Below, piece after piece: positions 19,910 through 53,782 of a stretch of DNA of 64,000 nucleotides. Made by a program: the position numbers and the translations under genes. Location: assembly GCA_002269645.1 (NCBI GenBank), contig NIVC01000142.1, positions 434,001-498,000 of the forward strand, given 5' to 3'. The stretch comes from Macrostomum lignano. Lineage: Eukaryota. The notes below the pieces were generated by a model. That model worked only from the letters and a program-made list of their open reading frames with translations. It did not search any database and was not told where the DNA came from. Position 1 is the stretch's first letter. Each line of letters opens with the position of its first letter.

Positions 19910-32571
<12,662 letters not shown>

Positions 32572-39497: not shown

Positions 39498-40517
39498 TCA
39501 GGCCGAGCTGATGTTGAACCGGGCCGCTCGCAGCTGCAGCTTCTCCTCGTTGGTTGGCGGCAGGTTGAACCGATCGGCGCGCGCCTTCAGCCTGGCAGCC
39601 TCGGCGTCCGCCTCAGCGGCCGGCTTGGCCAGCCCGAATCGCTCCGCCCGGATGCGCAGCCGCTCCGCCTCCGCTGTCGACGAAGCTGCGGCGGTGGCGG
39701 CGGCGGCGGCGGCTGGAGCGGCTCCGCTGGATGCGGCAGCGAGGCCGAACCGCTCGGCCCGCTTGCGCTTTCGCTCTTCGAGCTCCTCGGCGCTCGCGCC
39801 ATCGCCGCCGCCGCCGCTTGCTCCGATGCCGAATCGCTCGGCGCGCAGGGCCTTCCGCTTCTCCATGTCTTCGGCGGAGATCCCGTCGCCGCCGCCTCCG
39901 GTGCCAAATCGTTCAGCGCGCAGGGCCTTTCGCTTCTCGACATCGTCAGCTGAGGCGCCGGTGCCGAATCGTTCGGCGCGCAGAGCTTTGCGCTTCTCCA
40001 TCTCGTCGTTGGTGGCGGCAGCAGCGGCGCCGAATCGCTTGGCTCGCAGGGCCAGCAGCTCAGCTTCGCTCGGCTTGCTTGCCGCTGCAGGCTTCGGCGG
40101 AGAGGCGGCCGGAGGAGCGGCGGTTTCCGGAGCAGCAGCGGCAGCGGCGGTCCCAGCCGGCTGGGTGAGTCGGACTTTCTTAGCTGAGGAGGCGGCCTCG
40201 CTGTTGGCCGTAGCGGGTGCCGCCGCGCCTTCGCTAGCAGCGGGTTTCGAAGCAGCGGGAGCAGCAGCAGCAGCCGCTGGAGCCGCCAGCTTCAATTTTA
40301 ACGGCGGCACCACAGCCGGTTGCGGGGCCGACGTTATGGCGTCCCCTTCCAGCAGGCTGTCTTCGGCCCGCTTGACCAGCAATTCATGAAGCCGCTCGAC
40401 CAGCTCCTTCTTTGAGCCCGTGACTGGCAGCTCGGCCGCTTTGCACTGCTCTTTGAGCTCCTTCAGTTTCATCCGACTCAAATCTTCAACGCTCGGTACG
40501 TCGGTCGATTCGGACAT
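39498..40517 (-). CDS. SARNP: SAP domain-containing ribonucleoprotein (CIP29/Tho1 family), single exon
   Basis: ATG at 40517; SAP domain (LSRMKLKELKEQCKAAELPVTGSKKELVERL) and repeated RAxRFG motifs. Confidence 0.9.
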   Translation of the reverse strand: MSESTDVPSVEDLSRMKLKELKEQCKAAELPVTGSKKELVERLHELLVKRAEDSLLEGDAITSAPQPAVVPPLKLKLAAPAAAAAAPAASKPAASEGAAAPATANSEAASSAKKVRLTQPAGTAAAAAAPETAAPPAASPPKPAAASKPSEAELLALRAKRFGAAAAATNDEMEKRKALRAERFGTGASADDVEKRKALRAERFGTGGGGDGISAEDMEKRKALRAERFGIGASGGGGDGASAEELEERKRKRAERFGLAAASSGAAPAAAAAATAAASSTAEAERLRIRAERFGLAKPAAEADAEAARLKARADRFNLPPTNEEKLQLRAARFNISSA

Positions 40518-40569
40518 GACTGGCTGGATCTGGCATGAACCGGGTTGGAGGTTGGTCATTCACTCAGGC

Positions 40570-42765
40570 ACATTCACTAAGAGTAGAGGCAGATTCACTA
40601 AGAGAAGAGGCAGATTCACTAAGAGAAGAGGCAGATTCACTAAGAGAAGAGGCAGATTCACTAAGAGAAGAGGCAGATTCACTAAGAGAAGAGGCAGATT
40701 CACTAAGAGAAGAGGCAGATTCACTAAGATTAGAGGCAGATTCACTAAGAGAAGAGGCAGATTCACTAAGAGAAGAGGCAGATTCACTAAGATTAGAGGC
40801 AGATTCACTAAGAGAAGAGGCAGATTCACTAAGAGAAGAGGCAGATTCACTAAGAGAAGAGGCAGATTCACTAAGAGAAGAGGCAGACTCACTAAGAGGC
40901 AGATTCACTAAGAGAAGAGGCAGATTTACTAAGAGAAGAGGCAGATTCACTAAGAGAAGAGGCAGACTCACTAAGAGGCAGATTCACTAAGAGAAGAGGC
41001 AGATTCACTAAGAGAAGAGGCAGATTCACTAAGAGAAGAGGCAGACTCACTAAGAGAAGAGGCAGACTCACTAAGAGGCAGATTTACTAAGAGAAGAGGC
41101 AGATTCACTAAGAGAAGAGGCAGACTCACTAAGAGGCAGATTTACTAAGAGAAGAGGCAGATTCACTAAGAGAAGAGGCAGATTCACCAAGAGAAGAGGC
41201 AGACTCACCAAGAGAAGAGGCAGATTCACTAAGAGAAGAGGCAGATTCACTAAGAGAAGAGGCAGATTCACTAAGAGAAGAGGCAGACTCACTAAGAGGC
41301 AGATTCACTAAGAGAAGAGGCAGATTTACTAAGAGAAGAGGCAGATTCACTAAGAGAAGAGGCAGACTCACTAAGAGGCAGATTCACTAAGAGAAGAGGC
41401 AGATTCACTAAGAGAAGAGGCAGATTCACTAAGAGAAGAGGCAGACTCACTAAGAGAAGAGGCAGACTCACTAAGAGGCAGATTTACTAAGAGAAGAGGC
41501 AGATTCACTAAGAGAAGAGGCAGACTCACTAAGAGGCAGATTTACTAAGAGAAGAGGCAGATTCACTAAGAGAAGAGGCAGATTCACCAAGAGAAGAGGC
41601 AGACTCACCAAGAGAAGAGGCAGATTCACTAAGAGAAGAGGCAGATTCACTAAGAGAAGAGGCAGATTCACTAAGAGAAGAGGCAGACTCACTAAGAGAA
41701 GAGGCAGATTCACCAAGAGAAGAGGCAGATTCACCAAGAGAAGAGGCAGATTCACTAAGAGAAGAGGCAGATTCACTAAGAGAAGAGGCAGATTCACTAA
41801 GAGAAGAGGCAGACTCACTAAGAGGCAGATTTACTAAGAGAAGAGGCAGATTCACCAAGAGAAGAGGCAGACTCACCAAGAGAAGATGCAGATTCACTAA
41901 GAGAAGAGGCAGATTCACTAAGAGAAGAGGCAGACTCACTAAGAGGCAGATTCACTAAGAGAAGAGGCAGATTCACTAAAAGAGGCAGATTCACTAAGAG
42001 AAGAGGCAGACTCACTAAGAGGCAGATTCACTAAGAGAAGAGGCAGATTCACTAAGAGAAGAGGCAGATTCACTAAGAGAAGAGGCAGACTCACTAAGAG
42101 GCAGATTCACTAAGAGAAGAGGCACATTCACTAAGAGAAGAGGCAGACTCACTAAGAGGCAGATTTACTAAGAGAAGAGGCAGATTCACTAAGAGAAGAG
42201 GCAGATTCACTAAGAGAAGAGGCAGATTCACTAAGAGAAGAGGCAGACTCACTAAGAGGCAGATTCACTAAGAGAAGAGGCACATTCACTAAGAGAAGAG
42301 GCAGACTCACTAAGAGGCAGATTTACTAAGAGAAGAGGCAGATTCACTAAGAGAAGAGGCAGATTCACTAAGAGAAGAGGCAGACTCACCAAGAGAAGAG
42401 GCAGATTCACTAAGAGAAGAGGCAGATTCACTAAGAGAAGAGGCAGACTCACCAAGAGAAGAGGCAGACTCACTAAGATTAGAGGCAGATTCACTAAGAG
42501 AAGAGGCAGATTCACTAAGATTAGAGGCAGATTCACTAAGAGAAGAGGCAGATTCACTAAGAGAAGAGGCAGATTCACCAAGAGAAGAGGCAGACTCACC
42601 AAGAGAAGAGGCAGATTCACTAAGAGAAGAGGCAGACTCACCAAGAGAAGAGGCAGACTCACTAAGAGAAGAGGCAGATTCACTAAGAGTAGAGGCATTT
42701 TCACAAAGTAGAAGAGGCAGATTCACTAAGAGTAGAGGCAGATTTACAAAGGGAAGAGGCAGATT
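40570..42765 (-). repeat. 21-bp minisatellite, acceptor-like on the minus strand (TGAATCTGCCTCTTCTCTTAG)n
   Basis: About 100 copies, with 16-bp variants, between the eIF3f 3' end and the SARNP ATG. Confidence 0.97.
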
Positions 42766-43126
42766 CTTAATAGAGCAGTTTGAAGGAGAGAAATGACAGT
42801 GGATCCTTGCCAGTATAAAACTAATAATAAAAACTTTAAGCAAAAACGCAACAATATCACCGAATTCGTAGTTCCTTTCCGAACTTCGAGCCGATCAGAA
42901 AGCTCGAATAAAACAGTTTATTTCTTGTTTTAATTTCTGTCGGTTTTTTGTTTCTGTTTGTAATCGAATGCTAACACTGTTTAAACACCGTTTGCAAACG
43001 CGCGCACACACTATAGCGGTTCTGTTGTTCATATTTTCTTATAATGAGTCACATTGACGCCACTCCGAACCAACCCACACCGAAACGGAAAACACAGCTG
43101 GCAGGCGGGGGGGGGGGTTAACAGTG

Positions 43127-44188
43127 TCACATAGCTATTAGCTTCTCGTTGAAGTCGAGATGGGTTCGAATCATTGTGGTCAGGTAGGACAGCATCAGCA
43201 GGTCCTTAGTTGATGAGTTCACCATATCGTCGAATGTCTCTTTGTCCAATTTGGGCACCGTGTTGACCAGCTGGGCTAGGGATCTGCCCAGCTGCGGGTC
43301 CGCCTTCTGCTGGTCAGTTAGCACGGAGTCGACGTAGGCAATCACCTGCGGGTGCGTTTGTCAGGGAGTTGTGGCCATTAGAGGCGATTCTCATGCTGGG
43401 TTTGGGCGATTCTCATTCTGGCTTTGGGGCGATTCTCATGCTGGATTCGGAGAGGTTATTTGGTTTGGATTAAATAGCAGCAATCTTATTTAAACGGCGC
43501 ATGAACCCACCTGCTCCAGCATTCGAGACAGATTCCTGGCAGCCGAACGCACATTGCCAACATCGTCTAGCAGGCTGACGGCACGTTTAATATTGTTCCT
43601 GCCGCTCTGCATCACCCGACAGGCGGCGGCTTCGTCATCGTAGGCCTCGTTGCGAAGCTCGATTGGCACAAACATTGTGCCCTTGGTCTTGCCTGGAACG
43701 CCGAACGTGGTGCTGACGAAAGCTCGAAATTGCATTCTTGGCCGGCTGTCGTCAACCTCGGCGTTAACTAGCAGGTGTACAGGCCTGCGGCATTCTCGCG
43801 AGTAATAGTCGTGTATGAGCACCGATGGAGCTCGGATGCTGGAGCCGGTGCTGAACCAGCCTACAATAGACTCGCCGGGATTGGCTTTGCGATGCAATTC
43901 GAACATGGCCCGCTGGAATTCTATGTCAATGGCGGCGCTGTCCTCGGATTCGCTGTGCGGCACAGAGAAACAATTTGTAGCCGTCACCTGACCCTTGCTG
44001 TCGCTGCTGCCTGCTCGGTTGAGTAGTTGGTCTGACTGTTATCGATTCCATCCTATCTTCTGTCTGTCTGTCTGTCTGTCTGCCTGCCTGCCTGTGTGTC
44101 TGCCTGCCTGCCTGTCTGTCTGTGTGTCTGTCTGTCTGTCTGTCTGTCTGTCTGCCTGCCTGCCTGTGTGTCTGCCTGCCTGCCTGTG

Positions 44189-44223
<35 letters not shown>

Positions 44224-44422
44224 TGGTCTGTCTGTACATTATCCCATCTATCTGTCCCGTCTCCTGACTGCCTTCCCGCATGCACAGTGAGCACTCACCT
44301 AGCAGAGTGCCAATCACTTGCAGCTGGTTCTCTGGCCGGCGCTCATAAAAGTCAATAATTTGTAACAGCACAGTGGGGTGCACCCGCAGCTGCAGAGCCC
44401 CTGAACTACTGCTTACTTTAGC
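43127..44422 (-). CDS. EIF3F: Eukaryotic translation initiation factor 3 subunit F (MPN domain); start codon not found in the genome
   Basis: Exons 44422-44299, 44010-43511, 43345-43127. LRVHPTVLLQIIDFYERR..VIGTLLG, TNCFSVPHSE, IVGWFSTG, IHDYYSRE, NSSTKDLLMLSYL..NEKL. Confidence 0.92.
44050..44235. repeat. (CTGT/CTGC)n microsatellite in eIF3f intron 1
   Basis: Direct inspection. Confidence 0.95.
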
Positions 44423-45128
44423 CTGAAAAAGTTTTTAGTAGTATATATGCTTGATTTGAATGTAATATTAAAAATCGCATAAAGGTTAGTGTGTTTGATA
44501 CTATATACAAAAATCTTGCATATTACAATAGGGGTCAAATCATAAAAATACAATCAATTACAATTTTTTTACACAATTTTACAAATTTGGATATTTAAAT
44601 TTGACATAAATTTTTGTTACATCCTTGCATTTTTTCTAATATACAAAAACAATCCAAAAAAGATCAATACAAGTGTGGCCTAGCCCAATATTATACTTTT
44701 ATATTTTTATATAGTTTTTATAGGTTAGGACATAGAGATAGTCTATAGCATATAGATAGCACATAGTGCACATATAAGTCAATAATGTGCAATAATTATG
44801 TGCAATAATTATGTGCAATAATTGGCCAAGTCAGCCAATCTGGCTGACCAATTTGGCGGCCAACCAAGGTAAGTTGCAAAAATGCCCACCCGAATAAATA
44901 CCCAAGTAATACTAAGTAGATAACAAGGCATTTTGTCTTAATAGGATAGTCACAGTTACTCCTGCCATTCACCCAAAGCTGCTTAATTCTGCTTTAGGGT
45001 TTTTTACATGTAAGTCACATTTTTGGCCAAAAACGTTCTTTATTAATGTTTATTCTCTATTCTCTATTAATTCTTTATTATGATAGAAAAAAGATATTTA
45101 TATAGATACCTATCTGGTACACTTTGAA

Positions 45129-45305
45129 CAAGGGCGGATCCAGAGAGGAGGCCAAGGGGGCCATGGCCCCCCCTTAACTATGGCCAAAGAAATTTTGATC
45201 ATACTTTTTTGACCTGCTACTATGCCAGGTCTATTTTCCAATATAGGGTTGTAATGCTTGGTATAGCTTTGCCCCCTTCTCAAAAATTTTCTGGATCCAC
45301 GCCTG
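45129..45305. mobile_element. hAT-type MITE
   Basis: TIRs CAAGGGCGGATCCAGA / CAGGCGTGGATCCAGA; 8-bp TSD ACTTTGAA / ACTTTAAA (7/8). Confidence 0.75.
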
Positions 45306-47517
45306 ACTTTAAAATATGTTAGTATACTTAGAATTCCTCATATTCATTACAAATCCTCATATTCATTACAATTGCACTTTTTTAGTATAATATGGTAGTG
45401 TTAAACTAATAAGACTAAGGGACTAAGGGGTAGTATTAAACTAATAACTAAACTAAATAGCATCATCTTTATATGCTTTGAAACCTTAAATTTGAAAGCT
45501 AGTCATGAAACCCCCAAAGGCTTAATGCACAAAATATATGATGTTCCCTTATCATTTATTAATCTTTGCTCCCTTTTCTTTATATTGCTTGCCTTGGCTT
45601 AAGTTCTAAATTCCAAGGACTTAAAAGTTCCTTTTATTTTTTGAAATTGGCAATATTTATTCATCTCTAACCCTTTTTAGATGCTAATCACTTTGTCAAT
45701 TAGCATTTTGTCAAATGGTTGACTATTTGGTAAGGGTAGCAGTATTTGCAATTGACAAAGTGACTATTTGAATTTTGGCAAGGGTAGTAGTATTTGCAAT
45801 TGATGAAGTAACCTTGTTTTTAATTATATTTACTTTGATACCAAATGTATATAGAGAATTGAGCTTGAAAAAAGTATTAATTTGTGATTATAAAAGGTTA
45901 AAATCATATTTAGTTATTTAGATTTATTCATAAATTGTTTATCATTGTTTATTATTCTGTTTAAAAAAACATTTATACTTTATTGTAATTCAATGTTGAA
46001 ATTCAAGTTTTAATTTGAATTAAAATCATTTAAAAAATTCAAACATAGGCCTATGGCTATGTTATATATTTTATTTGGAAACAACACAACATAGTAAGGC
46101 CTATGTTGCACTTTGAAATTAATTAAGGGGGCTAACCTGCTTAATCTGTTTCATTTATATAAAAAAGTTAACAGAAGAAATTTTGGCATAGATACAGATG
46201 CAGCTATCAACATATATACATAATACAATTATACTACAAATATACTACAATACTATATATAGGCCTATACATAACATAATCAAGGGCATAGCCAAAAGGG
46301 GGGATAAAGGCCTAAGGGCATGTTCCCCTGGAAGGGGAATTTTTTACTGCCTTTGTATTTTGCTTCCATTGCTTCCATTAGAGATAGGGCCTATATTTAA
46401 CATGTCATTAGCATCAGGCCCTTGGTCTATAAATACAATAAGACATCATTCAATTAACTATTATTTCAATCTATTGTAGCATAGGCCTAGACCTACAGTT
46501 ATACATACGCCTTACGCCTAATCTCCACTCCCACAAACCTTATCAGATGAAACTATTACTATTAGGCCTACGCATTAACTAATTCTATCCCATGTGTATA
46601 CTGTGTAGTCTATGGAATACAACTGTTATTTTGAGTTTTTAACTCTTTATGGCTTAATTTTTGTATCCTTCAGGCAAACACAGGCAGAATTGCCAGGTGA
46701 CGTCGTCGACATCCTTGCGCTACACACACAGCCAAAAATTAAAATTTCGTTCAAAGGCAATTTCTCTCTTCAATCGTGTTATTAAGGAAAAAGCCAGTTA
46801 ATGTGTAAAAATCATTCTTTTTAATTAGATTTAGTTTTTTATTTTTATATCCTAATAAACAGCCTTTTAATTTTTGGTTAAATCTCCAAAAACGACGTTT
46901 ATTTTTTGTTAAGCTGACTACATCATTTAAAAAAATTGGTTTACAATAATTGGATTGATTATTTACACCTATATCTGCCCAGAAATTCTACTATTAAGTA
47001 ACACCCCACGAATATGTTCTGTAAAACTCATTTAAAAAACAATTTAAAAAAATCTGTATTTACAGCTGCGTACCCTACAAACTCGTTGCCCCTGACAGGC
47101 TAGTGACATGTACGACTCCTTCTCATGACTGATGTATGAGGCTACCCGAGCTAACAACATGTTTTTTTTCTGGGGCAGAAGCAAGTTTTAGCAGCCCAAT
47201 TTAATTTCAATAAAGTGTACCTAATTTGCTAATAGCGGACATAATCAGATACATGTACACATGTACATGTATGCTGGACAGGGGTGTCGGAATCGGGGGG
47301 GGGGGGGGGCTGAAGCCCCCTCCCACTTTTTGCCATGATCCAGCAAGTGCCCTTTTTGAATTTTAAACAAGTGTCGACTGGTTTTGGGCTCTGGCTCTTC
47401 TGAGTCTTGGAAGCTAGTGGGGTATCAGCTGATATAATACCCGTAGTTCATGTTGTTCTCAATCTCCATTCCACTACAGTTTTTATCTACTGTGCATAAG
47501 CCTTGGTGCTTTTAGTG

Positions 47518-48853
47518 CATTGGTCAGCAAACTTTTCACCTAAAGGGCCAGATTGAGAACCTAGCGTGGCGCAATGACTGCCCTTCTGGGTTTGCTTCGC
47601 TGGGCCCCCGTAAGCAAAATGCGCCCATGAGTCCCTGACTGCAGGCAAGAGAAGGGAGAGAGGATAGGGAATAGAGTAGAGAATTATATGAGCGTAGGAG
47701 AAAGGAGAGGCAAGGAGAGGAGAAGGAAAGGAAAGACAAGATAAGAGGAGAGAGGAGAGGAGAGAAAAGAGGAGAGGAGAGGAGAGGAGAGGAGAGAGGA
47801 GAGGGGAGGAGAGGAGAGAAAAGAGGAGAGGAGAAAAGAGGAGAGGAGAGGAGAGGAGAGGAGAGGAGAGGAGAGGAGAGGAGAGGTGAAGGGATAAAGG
47901 AGAAGAGAGTAGACGAGAAGAGAGATAAAATTGGAGAGGGGAGATGGATGAGGAGAGGAGAGACGAAATAGGAGAGAGAGGAGAGAAGAGGGAAGGGAGA
48001 AGAGAATGGAGAGAAAAAGTAGAGGAGAGATGAGAGGAGAGAGGTGAGGAGATGAGAGGAAAGAGAGGAGAGGGGAGGGGAGGAGAGGAGAGAATAGGAG
48101 AGGAGAAGGAGAAGGAAAGGAAAGACAAGATGAGAGGAGAGAGGAGAGGAGAGAAGAGAGGAGAGAAGAGAGGAGAGAAGAGAGGAGAGAAGAGAGGAGA
48201 GAAGAGAGGAGAGAAGAGAGGAGAGGAGAGGAGAGAAGAGGAGAGAGGAGAGGTGAAGGAATAAAGGAGAAGAGAGTAGACGAGAAGAGAGATAAAATTG
48301 GAGAGGGGAGATGGACGAGGAGAGGAGAGACGAAATAGGAGAGAGGGGAGAGAAGAGGGAAGGGAGAAGAGAATGGAGAGAAAAGGGAGAGGAGAGAGGT
48401 GAGGAGATGAAAGGAAAGAAAGCGAGGAAAGGAGAGGGGAGGAGAGGAGAGGAAGAGGAGAGGAAAGAAAAGATGAGAGGAGAGAGGAGAGGAGAGAATT
48501 GAGAGGAGAGGAGAGAGGAGAGGAGATGAGAGAGGTGAGGAGAGTAGAGAGGAGAGGAGATGAGAGAGTTGATGAGAGGAGGGAAGAGAGGAGAGAAGAG
48601 GAGAGGAGAGGAAAGGAGAGAGGAGAGGAGAGAGGTGAGGAGAGGAAAGGAGAGAGGAGAGGAGATAGGTGAGGAGATGAGAGGAGAAGAGAGAGGAGAG
48701 GAGAGAACAGGAGAGAATATGAGAAGAGAGCTGAGAAGAGACAAACATCGAGCGGGCCGGATTGCTATTGTGAAGATTTAAAGGATCTGAGGGCCGGATA
48801 GAGAGGCTTTGCGGGCCACATTTGGCCCTCAGGCCGGAGTTTGCCAACCCCTG
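47518..48853. mobile_element. hAT (Charlie/Buster-like) non-autonomous element with an internal ~1-kb purine tract
   Basis: Ends CATTGGTCAGCAAACTTTTCACCTAAAGGGCCAGAT and GCGGGCCACATTTGGCCC...GTTTGCCAACCCCTG (MER58-like); TSD TTTTAGTG / TTTTAGTA with central TA. Confidence 0.75.
47695..48740. repeat. (GAGAG/GGAGA)n purine-rich simple repeat
   Basis: Direct inspection; includes an internal ~340-bp duplication. Confidence 0.95.
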
Positions 48854-49429
48854 TTTTAGTATTCAGCCCTTTCACTTTTGGCGTCTCTGATCGAAATTCC
48901 GAGTGCGCCGCAATCCCAAGACCTCAACCGCTGCTGGCGCTGCAACCAAAATTGCTAAAATGCCGTCAGCTAAAAGAATAAAGAGACAGTGCCAAGAGGA
49001 ACTGAAGGATTTTACTATATAAATTGATAATGCAATTTTCGCAATTAGTTGCGCGATGTTTGAATCAGTTAAAAATTCAAACATTTTCAGACTTTTGGCC
49101 ACTTCCAACTCAAAATTGAATATCGGCCTGGTTGTCACAATTTCACAAACTGATACAACAGCAGGAGTTTGGGTGCCTTTAGATTTAAAGAAATTATTTG
49201 CAATGTGCCCTCCCATCAATAGCCCCCCCCCCACTTGCAACTTTCCGGTTGACATCAAACGACTTTCAGCAGGCAAACTTTCCCGGCCCTGGCAACTTTC
49301 CGACTGGCAACTTCAGCTGGCAACTTCCAGGTTGGCAACTCTCCCACGCCAAACATGCAGTACATGTGCATACGCGCGTGTGTACATGTACGTACTGAAC
49401 TAAAGTACATGTACATGTACATATACTGC

Positions 49430-50020
49430 TGTCTGTCGCGTCGTCGCGGGGGGGGACAGGGGCTGGTCCCTCTAGTAAAGAATGGGGGGGACATGACAAT
49501 TATGCTTGTCCCCCCTTCACCCCACCTTAATTGTGGCGCGTTTTGGAAATCAATTTTGTTTCAGGACGCTAAAAAGGAACTGTGGCGCTGAAATATGAAG
49601 TGCCTTCGGCGCTAAATGCGTGTTCTGCGACGTTAAAATGAGCTCAACAACACCGGCCGATTCTCAAAATACATGTACTGTATACATGTATGTAGCTTTT
49701 CAAAACATGTACATTGAAATTTAGTCATGTACATGTAAAATTCTTGGCTCTGCTGCCCCCCCAGCATAAAATCCATGGCGGCCCACCTTGTGGCCCGTTG
49801 TGGAAATCAATAATTTTGTTTCCGGACCGTGCTAAAATTTAGCACCTGTGGCGCTAAAATGATAGTGCCTTCCATTCGGCGTTAAAAAAATAAGTGCGAA
49901 GACAACACCGACTCTCAATATGTAGATTCTCAAATCATATGTGTAGCAATTTAGTCATGTATACATGAAATTCTTGGCTTTGTCTCCCCACCAAAAAATC
50001 CATGGGGACGACGCCCCCCC
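49430..50020. mobile_element. Degenerate MITE copy (family of 63233-63710) with an internal duplication
   Basis: Shares GGGGGGACATG, GTGCCTTCGGCGCTAAA and CATAAAATCCATGG with the reverse complement of the 63233 copy. Confidence 0.55.
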
Positions 50021-50343
50021 CGTGTGTAATGTACCATCGTTACACATTACATTGTACAATTTGCGCACATACATTTACATGCATAATATATTGCTCTGAT
50101 GGTAGCATAATAACTAATATACAGGTGGAAGTTTTGTGAGAGACACACTAGTACATGTTGTACATGTATGTGCCCTCTATTCTTGATCCATATAAATGTA
50201 TTTCGGTGAAAAAAATGAAATGTATTTTTACATAGCAACAGAATAAAGCTTGCTGCATCGAGATGTACATGAATGTTTAACCCCACATATTTACACGACA
50301 AAATATACCACCACAGAATGTATACTACTGTACAGGTCAAAAC

Positions 50344-50359
50344 GGCCCTTTTCAGGGCC
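50344..50359 (+). other. Orphan perfect histone 3' stem-loop
   Basis: AAAACGGCCCTTTTCAGGGCCAC with no histone CDS upstream. Confidence 0.85.
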
Positions 50360-50800
50360 ACTAAATTTAATAAAGGCTTATACTCAATACTCATCGCTGC
50401 ATGGACCTTGCAATCACTCTCGTTAGTTGGGATATGGTCTAGTTAAAATAAGTACACTGTACACCGCTTTTGTGTAATTTTATGGCATAATATGGAATTA
50501 CATGTATGTTGTAGTAGGAAGACATGTAGCTCGTAGATATATTTTTGTCGTCATTGAATTGTGGCGAATATAAAATATATATGATACAATTTCTGACAAT
50601 TAGGCTTATCGACCGGCTTCTCAACTCTCTTGACCTGAGTTTGAACTTAAAGTGGAAGACCAATTCACAATTTTCCTTTCCGAACTTATACCGATTACCG
50701 AGTCGAGTGTTCAACAACTTACCCTCCACTGGACTTTTTCAGCATAAGTTCTGGTCATTCTACTTAAAGTAGTAGTATAAATACAGCTGAAGAAAAATAA

Positions 50801-51385
<585 letters not shown>

Positions 51386-51467
51386 GTTGCCGCGTTAGCA
51401 GCTAAGTGACTAGATCAGCAGTAATACTGCTGAGTTAAGCTGTCGATAGAAACCTGAACGTTAAAAC

Positions 51468-51483
51468 GGCCCTTTTCAGGGCC
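51468..51483 (+). terminator. Histone 3' stem-loop of H3
   Basis: GGCCCTTTTCAGGGCC. Confidence 0.95.
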
Positions 51484-53306
51484 ACCACATTTAATGAAAT
51501 CTTACTCGTCTGGGGTGTGGTCTGGTTAAAATGAGAGGAATTATTAGTACGAATCGTACTATGACCCTTCATTTACACTGATACTAAAGCCGGTCAAGCA
51601 GAACAAAAGCATTATGCCAATTACAAGCACGTAGCTCTACTCTTGCATTTGTGTATATAAATATACGATTTCTAACTACACCTTCCAAGCACAATTTTAT
51701 TTTTAGGCTAACTTAGTTACTGCCAACAATATTGTAAAATTGTAAATAGGTTGTGTGGATGATTTTCATTCGCTTGTATTGTATAGTAAAGTGCTTGTAT
51801 ATTCTGCAGCTTGCTATGTTAGGTCTGAGCATCTTTTAAGGTAGTTACAGCATGACTAATATATCCAAAATTTCTAAATCCATAATATTGAAAATTGCAA
51901 TGCGTACAATAATAAGATAAGTCACTGACTCTTACAATAGTATACTTTAAACTAAATATTTAAACAAACCGTACTGTACTAAATCGTTCAAGCTTTTCAT
52001 ATGGTCTGTTCCGTTTTCAGAATCTGTTCCAGAACCGTGTTCTAGTTCTGGTTGAGATTAGATCGAGAAAATTTCTGGATCTGTTGTCATGTTTACACAT
52101 GTTTACAGTAAAATATATTTGAAATCGTCAATTAATCTGTTTTTTTTCATATCCAAGACTGGCAAGAGGAAACAAAGACAAGGAAAGACAAATTATAAAG
52201 ACTGACAAACAAAATCGGTTCGAACTCGTCGAAGCTTTTCATTTTCCTACCGCGATTCTGGTTTCTGGAATCGGAATTATTCTGGTTCTGGGACTGGAAC
52301 CAATCTTCGTGAAAAGCATATTTTTGAGTTTGAGTTTTGCAACTCAAAAGTTCAATCCCAAAATTTACAAAGTACATTTATTACCGTAATAGGCCTTGGA
52401 AATAAAATGCTGTTCAACTTATTGTTTACAATCTTAAACTGGTAGTTAAAGAGAAATCTACTACTTAGTCTAAACTCAAAAGCTACGGTAAGTTGCCTGT
52501 TCAGTCTATTACACTACACATTCATTCGGCAGGCAGCAAACCACTCGCCAATCGTTTTGACAATTGCCGATGTATAGAATGCATCGGGTCATGTCCCCAG
52601 TGTCCCCCTGGGCTACGCCCCTGTGCACATTCAAATGGAAGTGATTCTTCCCCAGGACTGAGTACTCGTCGTATTAAACTCGCAGTACGCGTACATTACG
52701 ACTACCCTGAATACATGTGTATGCATGTATGCTTTAGCATGTACCTGCAATAACTTATTAAAGGTTATTAATTAGAGTGTTTTGTTTAATTCAAATAAAA
52801 ATAGCATTTGTTTATTCAATTTTATTGAATGAATCTGGCGACATTCGACAAGACAACTTAACCAAGTTAACTACTAAATCCCCAGATTAATTGGGTCATT
52901 AATTAGCTTTATTAGTAACTTCCGACTTGTGATGGAGTGAACTTGCCCATCAAATTCTGTTTTTTTACTAATGGAAGTTAAACGCAGTACATGTAAAACA
53001 GAGAGCATTCAAGGCAGAATAGTTGAATAGATTTATTTAAGTTGGATTGCAGAAATAAACGTGCATTTAAATTAAGTTTAACAACTTGCATGTAAGCTTA
53101 CTGTAAGTAGAAAGAGACGAACATTAAATTGTATTTAATCAGATGATTCTCTTTCAGCCAATAAGAGAGCTGGTCGTTGCCTAGGCCGTTGCTAAGAAAA
53201 TTTCTGTGTTGGATTCGTATATATATGTTAGGCCTGTCGCTTTAAATCTTAAATCAACGACTTCACTTCATCTCTAGTCTTCAAGTTCAATTCAGAAGAA
53301 TTCAAC

Positions 53307-53687
53307 ATGTCTGGACGTGGCAAGGGTGGCAAGGCCAGGAGCAAGGCAAAGACTCGCTCGTCTCGCGCGGGACTGCAATTCCCGGTCGGCCGTATTCACC
53401 GTCTGCTGCGTAAGGGCAACTACGCTGAGCGCGTTGGTGCCGGCGCTCCGGTGTACCTGGCCGCTGTGCTGGAGTACCTGGCTGCCGAGGTGCTCGAGCT
53501 GGCTGGCAACGCTGCTCGTGACAACAAAAAGACTAGGATCATCCCACGTCATCTTCAGCTGGCCATCCGCAACGACGAGGAGCTGAACAAGCTGCTGAGC
53601 GGCGTCACCATCGCTCAGGGCGGCGTTCTGCCCAACATCCAGGCCGTGCTGCTGCCTAAGAAGACAAAGGTGCCCGGCAAGGCCTAA
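53307..53687 (+). CDS. H2A: Histone H2A, canonical type
   Basis: Full 126-aa H2A, intronless; CCAAT near 53158 and TATA-like element near 53218. Confidence 0.99.
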
Positions 53688-53782
53688 TAAGTGTGGCTCT
53701 GCACCGGAACTACCAGTGACCAGACTGCATTTAGTGGCGTCTAACCTTATTAAATGACGCAATAAATCACGAACGCTAAAAC

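What the first reader, a model, noticed from the sequence alone, without database searches (positions are those of the whole stretch)
44299..44440. eIF3f has no genomic start codon; a spliced-leader AUG would complete it
Seen: the first coding exon starts at a strong acceptor (TTTTTCAG|GCT AAA GTA AGC...), an in-frame TAA lies four codons upstream, and the first in-frame ATG is well inside the MPN domain. Known: flatworm SL sequences end in AUG, which can act as initiator. Joining AUG at 44422 gives MAKVSSSSGALQLRVHP..., about 281 aa, a normal eIF3f length. Inference: translation of a core initiation factor depends on trans-splicing. This also supports the flatworm assignment.
Basis: partly seen in the sequence, partly recalled or inferred. 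Interest (0 to 1): 0.7.

Follow-up and report, generated by a model that had tools for sequence, protein, structure and literature searches.

The report
Spliced-leader AUG starts flatworm eIF3f
The eIF3f gene of the flatworm Macrostomum lignano has no start codon of its own and almost certainly borrows the AUG at the end of the trans-spliced leader, a start mechanism already documented in flatworms, so this is a clean example and not a new phenomenon.

Summary
On the minus strand, eIF3f exon 1 (44422-44299) begins directly after the acceptor TTTCAG. An in-frame TAA lies at 44437-44435, and the first in-frame ATG is codon 77 (43906-43904), inside the MPN domain. The window is Macrostomum lignano assembly Mlig_3_7. 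GenBank annotates this CDS as a 280-aa 'partial' protein starting at exactly that acceptor, in all three genomic copies.

The M. lignano spliced leader (SL) ends in ...TTGCATG. Joined to GCTAAAG it gives MAKVSS..., 281 aa, which is a normal eIF3f length.

I found indirect RNA evidence. The assembly was polished with RNA-seq. In one paralogous copy the four bases before the acceptor G are overwritten (TTCAG to GCATG), which reproduces the SL tail. The downstream SARNP-like gene's acceptor carries the same kind of scar, in the window itself. Between two copies, these are the only two clusters of adjacent mismatches in 16 kb.

No convincing cis-spliced ATG exon exists upstream. The mechanism has been known since Cheng et al. 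2006, and a trematode eIF3f has its own ATG. Verdict: interpretation supported; new member of a known kind; modest interest.

The parts
44423..44428 (-). Trans-splice acceptor TTTCAG, directly upstream of the first coding base.
   Evidence: Sequence. It fits the M. lignano trans-splice acceptor motif [T/C]TNCAG (PMC8629364). In paralogous copy L002 the bases at -5 to -2 are overwritten with SL bases.
44435..44437 (-). In-frame TAA in the outron. It blocks any upstream extension of the reading frame within the contiguous genomic sequence.
   Evidence: the upstream in-frame translation ends ...Y*KLFQ.
44299..44422 (-). eIF3f coding exon 1 (AKVSSSSGALQLRVHP...GTLLG, ends in phase 1). It contains no ATG in frame.
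   Evidence: It is identical to the start of GenBank PAA89681.1 (P0122).
44011..44298 (-). Intron 1 (GT...AG), containing a (CAGA)n microsatellite at 44059-44235.
   Evidence: The intron sits at the same position, after GTLLG, as in a trematode orthologue.
43511..44010 (-). eIF3f exon 2. The first in-frame ATG of the gene is at 43906-43904 (codon 77).
43346..43510 (-). Intron 2 (GT...AG).
43127..43345 (-). eIF3f exon 3, ending with the stop codon TGA at 43129-43127.
   Evidence: the annotated CDS end at L001 position 11296 equals window 43127.
44423..50900 (-). Presumed outron and promoter region. It is AT-rich and non-coding, and its 5' limit is unknown. It is bounded by divergently oriented histone genes.
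   Evidence: This is inference; no transcription start data were available.
40534..40537 (-). SL scar in the window itself. CATG replaces the acceptor of the downstream SARNP-like gene (copy L003 has the genuine TTGCAG). The first exon base of that gene is 40533.

Best explanation
The eIF3f pre-mRNA is transcribed from an unidentified promoter upstream of 44422. Its 5' part (the outron) is removed by spliced-leader trans-splicing at the acceptor TTTCAG|G. The 35-nt M. lignano SL, which ends in AUG, is joined directly to GCUAAAGUAAGC. That terminal AUG is in frame and is the only available initiator. The mature mRNA therefore has a 32-nt leader and encodes MAKVSSSSGALQLRVHP..., 281 aa. The gene structure, the missing genomic ATG, the frame, and the indirect RNA-read evidence for the junction are shown. 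That translation actually starts at the SL AUG on this mRNA is inferred. I also infer that the Met is probably removed afterwards, because residue 2 is Ala (general methionine aminopeptidase rule, from my own knowledge).
For: (1) There is no in-frame ATG before codon 77, and an in-frame TAA lies five codons upstream of GCT. (2) GenBank proteins PAA89681.1, PAA63483.1 and PAA75367.1, from three genomic copies, are 280 aa, flagged 'partial', and begin at AKVSS. That annotation places the 5' ends of trans-spliced genes at peaks of SL-trimmed RNA-seq reads, using the TBONE pipeline (PMC5730564). (3) The SL sequence ends in ATG, and the acceptor fits the trans-splice motif. (4) The assembly was polished with Pilon using RNA-seq as well as DNA reads. 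Copy L002 reads ...CTTTGCATG|GCTAAAG where L001 and L003 read ...CTTTTTCAG|GCTAAAG. That is 4 adjacent mismatches out of 7 in 1123 nt, and all four change the base to the SL base. (5) An unbiased scan of L002 against L003 (16,147 aligned nt, 0.93% mismatch) finds only two clusters of 3 or more adjacent mismatches. They are this acceptor and the acceptor of the next gene, and both change ...CAG to the SL tail. (6) L002 keeps the genomic bases at -8 and -9 and keeps its introns, and the window's scar at the neighbouring gene is only partial (TTCATG). This fits base-wise polishing and does not fit conversion by cDNA. (7) Orthologues place their Met 6-21 residues before the conserved RVHP motif; with the SL Met this protein has 14. 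(8) Initiation at the SL AUG is documented in flatworms and is noted for Macrostomum (PMC10468722).
Against: I could not inspect any RNA read, 5' RACE product or peptide directly; the junction evidence is indirect (annotation boundary plus polishing scars). The exact 281-aa sequence beginning with M is not in the 15-billion-protein collection. The AUG has U at -3, a weak context, although +4 is G. In two neighbouring genes the SL AUG would be out of frame with the main ORF, assuming they are trans-spliced where the sequence suggests; if so, ribosomes do not always use it. A minor cis-spliced isoform cannot be excluded from sequence alone.
Confidence: 0.88

Rival explanations
1. An upstream cis-spliced exon supplies the ATG, with or without a few extra codons. 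The acceptor at 44423 would then be an ordinary intron acceptor.
For: Sequence alone allows it. The 8.8 kb upstream contain 195 ATG...|GT phase-0 combinations. One has a consensus donor: ATG at 50758, MTRTYAEKVQWR, AGG|GTAAGT at 50723. An old ab initio model, UniProt A0A1I8H6C5, also cis-splices into this acceptor.
Against: One consensus-donor candidate is fewer than shuffled sequence gives (3.4 +/- 2.3). The RNA-seq-guided annotation has no such exon in any of the three copies. The polishing scar shows that reads crossing the acceptor carried SL bases. The ab initio model is a 3785-aa chimera whose upstream 'exons' are antisense ORFs of histones H2A and H3.
Confidence: 0.06
2. One copy (L002) really has a genomic ATG at this position, through a true mutation or capture of SL-derived sequence. 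In that case the gene family would not depend entirely on trans-splicing.
For: The deposited L002 sequence reads GCATG|GCT, so it has an in-frame genomic ATG.
Against: RNA-seq was used for polishing. The same kind of change occurs at a second trans-splice site, and only partially in one copy. Only the 4 bases nearest the junction are changed, and the introns are retained. The change destroys the AG acceptor and would leave a long AT-rich leader.
Confidence: 0.03
3. Translation starts elsewhere on the mRNA, either at a non-AUG codon in exon 1 or at Met77, giving a protein that is shorter to a small or large degree.
For: The SL AUG context is not optimal, and the SL AUG is evidently bypassed on other mRNAs.
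Against: Starting at Met77 would delete most of the conserved MPN domain. An in-frame AUG is present 32 nt from the cap with G at +4, so no non-AUG start is needed.
Confidence: 0.03

Closest known systems
Flatworm mRNAs that use the SL 3'-terminal AUG as initiator (Cheng, Cohen, Ndegwa and Davis, J Biol Chem 2006; Schistosoma, later Echinococcus).
   Same: The SL ends in AUG. That AUG is in frame with a conserved ORF that lacks its own start codon. The N-terminus matches orthologues only if the SL Met is used.
   Different: This is a different species (the free-living basal flatworm M. lignano) and a different gene (eIF3f). I found no paper naming eIF3f in this class. There is no experimental translation data for this mRNA.
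eIF3f orthologues of other animals, including the trematode Calicophoron daubneyi (CAL8087499.1).
   Same: The domain architecture is the same (JAB/MPN plus MitMem_reg), identity is 43-52%, the length is similar, and the first intron sits at the same place, after GTLLG.
   Different: The other orthologues encode their own ATG. In the trematode a genomic ATG lies 7 codons before the HIHP motif. Dependence on the SL AUG is therefore not a general flatworm feature of this gene.
slORFs: SL-supplied start codons in nematodes, ascidians and kinetoplastids (slORFfinder, PMC9851317).
   Same: The start codon is contributed by the trans-spliced leader.
   Different: In those taxa mostly near-cognate NUG codons create new or alternative ORFs. 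Here a canonical AUG completes a conserved essential ORF.

Membership tests
SL-AUG-initiated flatworm mRNA (class of Cheng et al. 2006) | The organism's spliced leader ends in AUG. | tested here: met
   The published M. lignano SL ends ...TTGCATG (PMC8629364). All reported flatworm SLs end in ATG (PMC12582326).
SL-AUG-initiated flatworm mRNA (class of Cheng et al. 2006) | The mRNA is SL trans-spliced at the acceptor that precedes the ORF. | tested here: met
   The evidence is indirect. The annotated CDS begins at the acceptor in three copies, from a pipeline that places the 5' ends of trans-spliced genes at SL-read peaks. An SL-tail polishing scar sits exactly at this junction in L002. The acceptor fits the trans-splice motif. 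I did not see the raw reads.
SL-AUG-initiated flatworm mRNA (class of Cheng et al. 2006) | The SL AUG is in frame with the main ORF, with no intervening stop. | tested here: met
   ATG|GCT AAA GTA... reads through to the TGA, 281 codons in all.
SL-AUG-initiated flatworm mRNA (class of Cheng et al. 2006) | No genomic in-frame AUG can give a full-length conserved N-terminus. | tested here: met
   There is a TAA five codons upstream, and the first ATG is codon 77, within the MPN domain. Alignment of orthologue N-termini agrees.
SL-AUG-initiated flatworm mRNA (class of Cheng et al. 2006) | Translation demonstrably initiates at the SL AUG. | not testable with these tools
   This needs N-terminal proteomics, ribosome profiling or a reporter assay.
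eIF3 subunit F | An MPN/JAB domain followed by the C-terminal MitMem_reg domain, with orthology to annotated eIF3f proteins. | tested here: met
   PF01398 E = 9e-24 and PF13012 E = 4e-24. The best hits are annotated eIF3f, 45-52% identical over 95% or more of the query.
SL-resolved operon (criteria of Ustyantsev and Berezikov 2021) | Adjacent same-strand genes, the downstream one trans-spliced, with a repeat-adjusted intergenic distance under 1 kb. | tested here: met
   The eIF3f stop is at 43127 and the SARNP-like acceptor at 40534. The 21-bp tandem array at 40566-42766 fills most of the gap, leaving about 390 nt.
SL-resolved operon (criteria of Ustyantsev and Berezikov 2021) | A polycistronic precursor RNA spans both genes. 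| not testable with these tools
   No RNA data were available.

The most novel reading that the evidence does not exclude
The GCATG in copy L002 is real genomic sequence and not a polishing scar. That would mean SL-derived bases, including the AUG, have been captured into the genome at a trans-splice site, converting an SL-dependent start codon into a genomic one. A second, weaker possibility is that the dependence of a core eIF3 subunit on the SL AUG acts as a regulatory link between the trans-splicing and TMG-cap translation route and the supply of eIF3.
Probability: 0.04. Interest if true: 0.6.

Novelty: new member of a known kind. Interest (0 to 1): 0.3.

Why it matters
The finding gives a clear, checkable example in a free-living basal flatworm of an essential and conserved gene whose start codon exists only in the mature trans-spliced mRNA. 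This explains why the public records list the protein as 'partial' (GenBank) or with spurious N-termini (UniProt LFQAKV..., and a 3785-aa chimera). Annotators of flatworm genomes need to add the SL Met to such models.

The side observation has practical value. Polishing with RNA-seq has written SL bases over trans-splice acceptors in the Mlig_3_7 reference. This destroys AG acceptors, creates false genomic ATGs, and can bias motif and start-codon analyses. Conversely, these scars mark trans-splice sites.

Tried and rejected
- Exact look-up of the 281-aa M-initiated protein (both allelic forms) in the 15-billion-protein collection found nothing, so no transcript-derived contig was available.
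- The supplements of PMC5730564 and PMC5816591 were searched for Mlig006250 and EIF3F, with no hits in the files held.
- Cheng et al. 2006 itself is not held, so it is cited only through papers that cite it.
- A first mismatch-cluster scan with megablast was swamped by off-diagonal tandem-repeat alignments. It was redone with colinear alignments only.
- Conservation of the upstream region was useless for finding a hidden exon, because the three copies are 95-99% identical over nearly the whole 10 kb.
- A scan of the window for longer SL fragments or an SL RNA gene found only chance-level 7-8 nt matches. Rfam found no SL RNA, only two histone stem-loops.
- The search of 1.84 billion representative proteins returned no names, so only one flatworm orthologue (a trematode) could be identified.

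Full report
**What is there.** The finding lies on the minus strand. Reading it and joining three exons with canonical AG/GT borders (44422-44299, 44010-43511, 43345-43127) gives an uninterrupted frame of 280 codons plus TGA. The product has a JAB/MPN domain (residues 10-115) and a MitMem_reg domain (residues 181-277). It is 45-52% identical over its whole length to annotated eIF3 subunit F proteins of many animals.

Exon 1 starts directly after TTTTTCAG. The upstream frame reads TAA AAA CTT TTT CAG, so a stop lies at 44437-44435. The first in-frame ATG is codon 77 (43906-43904), well inside the MPN domain.

**Whose genome.** The best protein hit is Macrostomum lignano eIF3f. The window is an exact reverse-complement match to GCA_002269645.1 contig NIVC01000142.1, the Mlig_3_7 assembly; locus L001 position 10001 corresponds to window 44422.

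**How public records treat the gene.** GenBank PAA89681.1 (Mlig006250g1) is identical to my 280-aa translation, begins at AKVSS and is flagged 'partial'. The two other genomic copies (PAA63483.1 and PAA75367.1, one amino acid different) are treated the same way.

That annotation was built from RNA-seq. A pipeline called TBONE places the 5' ends of trans-spliced genes at peaks of reads from which the spliced leader (SL) had been trimmed (PMC5730564). A 5'-partial CDS that begins at the first base after an acceptor is what that procedure yields when the start codon sits in the trimmed leader.

UniProt A0A1I8HHL5 instead begins LFQAKV, which is a translation of the polypyrimidine tract. A0A1I8H6C5 is a 3785-aa chimera whose upstream 'exons' are antisense ORFs of the neighbouring histone H2A and H3 genes.

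**The leader.** The published 35-nt M. lignano SL is CGGTCTCTTACTGCGAAGACTCAATTTATTGCATG, and the published trans-splice acceptor motif is [T/C]TNCAG (PMC8629364). TTTCAG fits that motif. Joining ...TTGCATG to GCTAAAGTAAGC puts the terminal ATG in frame and gives MAKVSSSSGALQLRVHP..., 281 aa. Orthologues carry their Met 6-21 residues before the conserved RVHP motif; this protein would have 14. No further N-terminal sequence is needed.

**Indirect RNA evidence found in the genome itself.** I fetched the two paralogous copies, L002 and L003. L001 and L003 read ...AAAAACTTTTTCAG|GCTAAAG. L002 reads ...AAAAACTTTGCATG|GCTAAAG. In the 1123 nt around the junction, L001 and L002 differ at 7 positions. 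Four of these are the adjacent bases -5 to -2, and each is changed to the base found in the SL tail.

The Mlig_3_7 assembly was polished with Pilon using Illumina DNA reads and also RNA-seq reads mapped with STAR (PMC5730564). SL-bearing reads aligned across the acceptor would produce exactly this overwrite.

The same thing happens at the next gene downstream. There L003 has the acceptor TTGCAG|C, L002 has TGCATG|C, and the window itself has TTCATG|C. In an unbiased scan of the colinear L002/L003 alignment (16,147 nt, 0.93% mismatch), the only two clusters of three or more adjacent mismatches are these two acceptors.

L002 keeps the genomic bases at -8 and -9, where the SL differs, and it keeps its introns. 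The window's scar is only partial. These points argue for base-wise polishing and against a real cDNA-mediated conversion. On either reading, RNA molecules with the SL tail abutting GCTAAAG must exist.

**Alternatives.**
- *Cis-spliced upstream exon.* A cis-spliced ATG exon cannot be excluded from sequence alone. However, the 8.8 kb between the acceptor and histone H2A hold only one ATG...|GT[AG]AG phase-0 candidate (50758-50723). Shuffled sequence gives 3.4 +/- 2.3.
- *Conservation as a test.* The three copies are too similar for conservation to help.
- *Other start sites.* Starting at Met77 would remove most of the MPN domain.

**Context.** The upstream neighbours are histone genes on the opposite strand: H3 at 50975-51385 with its stem-loop at 51463-51509, H2A at 53307-53687, and an orphan histone stem-loop at 50339-50384. 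eIF3f is therefore not a downstream gene of an annotated operon, and it must have its own outron.

Downstream on the same strand lies a SARNP/Tho1-like gene with SAP and Tho1_MOS11_C domains. A 2.2-kb array of 21-bp repeats separates the two genes, leaving about 390 nt of unique spacer. By the published criteria the pair would count as an operon. In that gene the SL AUG is out of frame, and its own ATG lies 16 nt downstream of the junction. The same would hold for ANAPC4 if it is trans-spliced at the putative CCTCAG acceptor, which carries no scar; there the ATG lies 13 nt downstream of the inferred junction. Only eIF3f needs the SL AUG here.

**Comparison with what is known.** All reported flatworm SLs end in AUG (PMC12582326). 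Cheng et al. 2006 reported that this AUG is in frame in 28% of Schistosoma mansoni trans-spliced transcripts, and that more than 40 cDNAs require it (as cited in PMC9851317). Conserved use of the SL AUG was later reported for Echinococcus (PMC3510090). Authors of Macrostomum genome papers note that the SL's final ATG is probably a start codon (PMC10468722).

The mechanism is therefore established. I found no paper naming eIF3f as a member of this class. In the trematode Calicophoron daubneyi the orthologue has a genomic ATG, with the first intron at the same position. The dependence seen here is lineage-specific, not a pan-flatworm feature.

**Verdict.** The finding is a new member of a known kind and of modest interest. 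The most useful by-product is the recognition of SL polishing scars in the reference assembly.

Noticed in passing
window 40534-40537 (minus strand); L002 9996-9999 and 12910-12913: The Mlig_3_7 reference carries 'SL scars'. At trans-splice acceptors, some duplicated copies have the last SL bases (..GCATG) in place of the genomic ..CAG. The likely cause is that RNA-seq reads were used for Pilon polishing. The scars remove AG acceptors and can create false genomic ATGs. They may also help explain why only 9,551 of 21,754 trans-splice sites matched the acceptor motif in PMC8629364.
   Followed up: yes
window 39498-40533 (minus strand) and 40566-42766: A SARNP/Tho1-like gene (SAP plus Tho1_MOS11_C domains) lies downstream of eIF3f on the same strand. 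Its trans-splice site was inferred from a polishing scar in the assembly. The spacer is almost entirely a 21-bp tandem repeat of about 108 copies, which is much shorter in the two other genomic copies. The pair meets the published operon criteria. Here the SL AUG is out of frame with the gene's own ATG at 40517-40515.
   Followed up: partly
window 50339-50384, 50975-51509, 53307-53687 (plus strand): A histone cluster lies upstream of eIF3f in divergent orientation. It comprises H3 with a canonical 3' stem-loop, H2A, and an extra histone stem-loop at 50339-50384 with no intact histone ORF in front of it, possibly a decayed histone gene.
   Followed up: partly
window 50954-51316 and 53292-53762 (minus strand): Long antisense ORFs of the GC-rich H3 and H2A genes were used as exons in UniProt A0A1I8H6C5. 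This is a 3785-aa chimeric model that runs through eIF3f, the SARNP-like gene and transposon-like sequence. UniProt A0A1I8HHL5 starts LFQ, translated from the polypyrimidine tract.
   Followed up: yes
window 44059-44235 and 43383-43444: Intron 1 of eIF3f is largely a (CAGA)n/(CAGG)n microsatellite that differs among the three copies. Intron 2 contains about 2.7 copies of a 22-nt repeat.
   Followed up: no
window 47696-48730: About 1 kb of purine-rich (AGGAG)n low-complexity sequence lies in the presumed eIF3f outron or promoter region. A poly-C run sits near 47290-47305.
   Followed up: no
L004 2985-3110 (Calicophoron daubneyi CAXVIE010000279.1): The trematode eIF3f has a genomic ATG. A possible acceptor (TCTCAG) lies 15 nt upstream, so an SL AUG joined there would also be in frame. 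The first intron sits at the same place, after GTLLG, as in M. lignano.
   Followed up: partly
window 30001-32000: This region has very strong GC skew (0.55) in the composition profile. I did not examine it.
   Followed up: no
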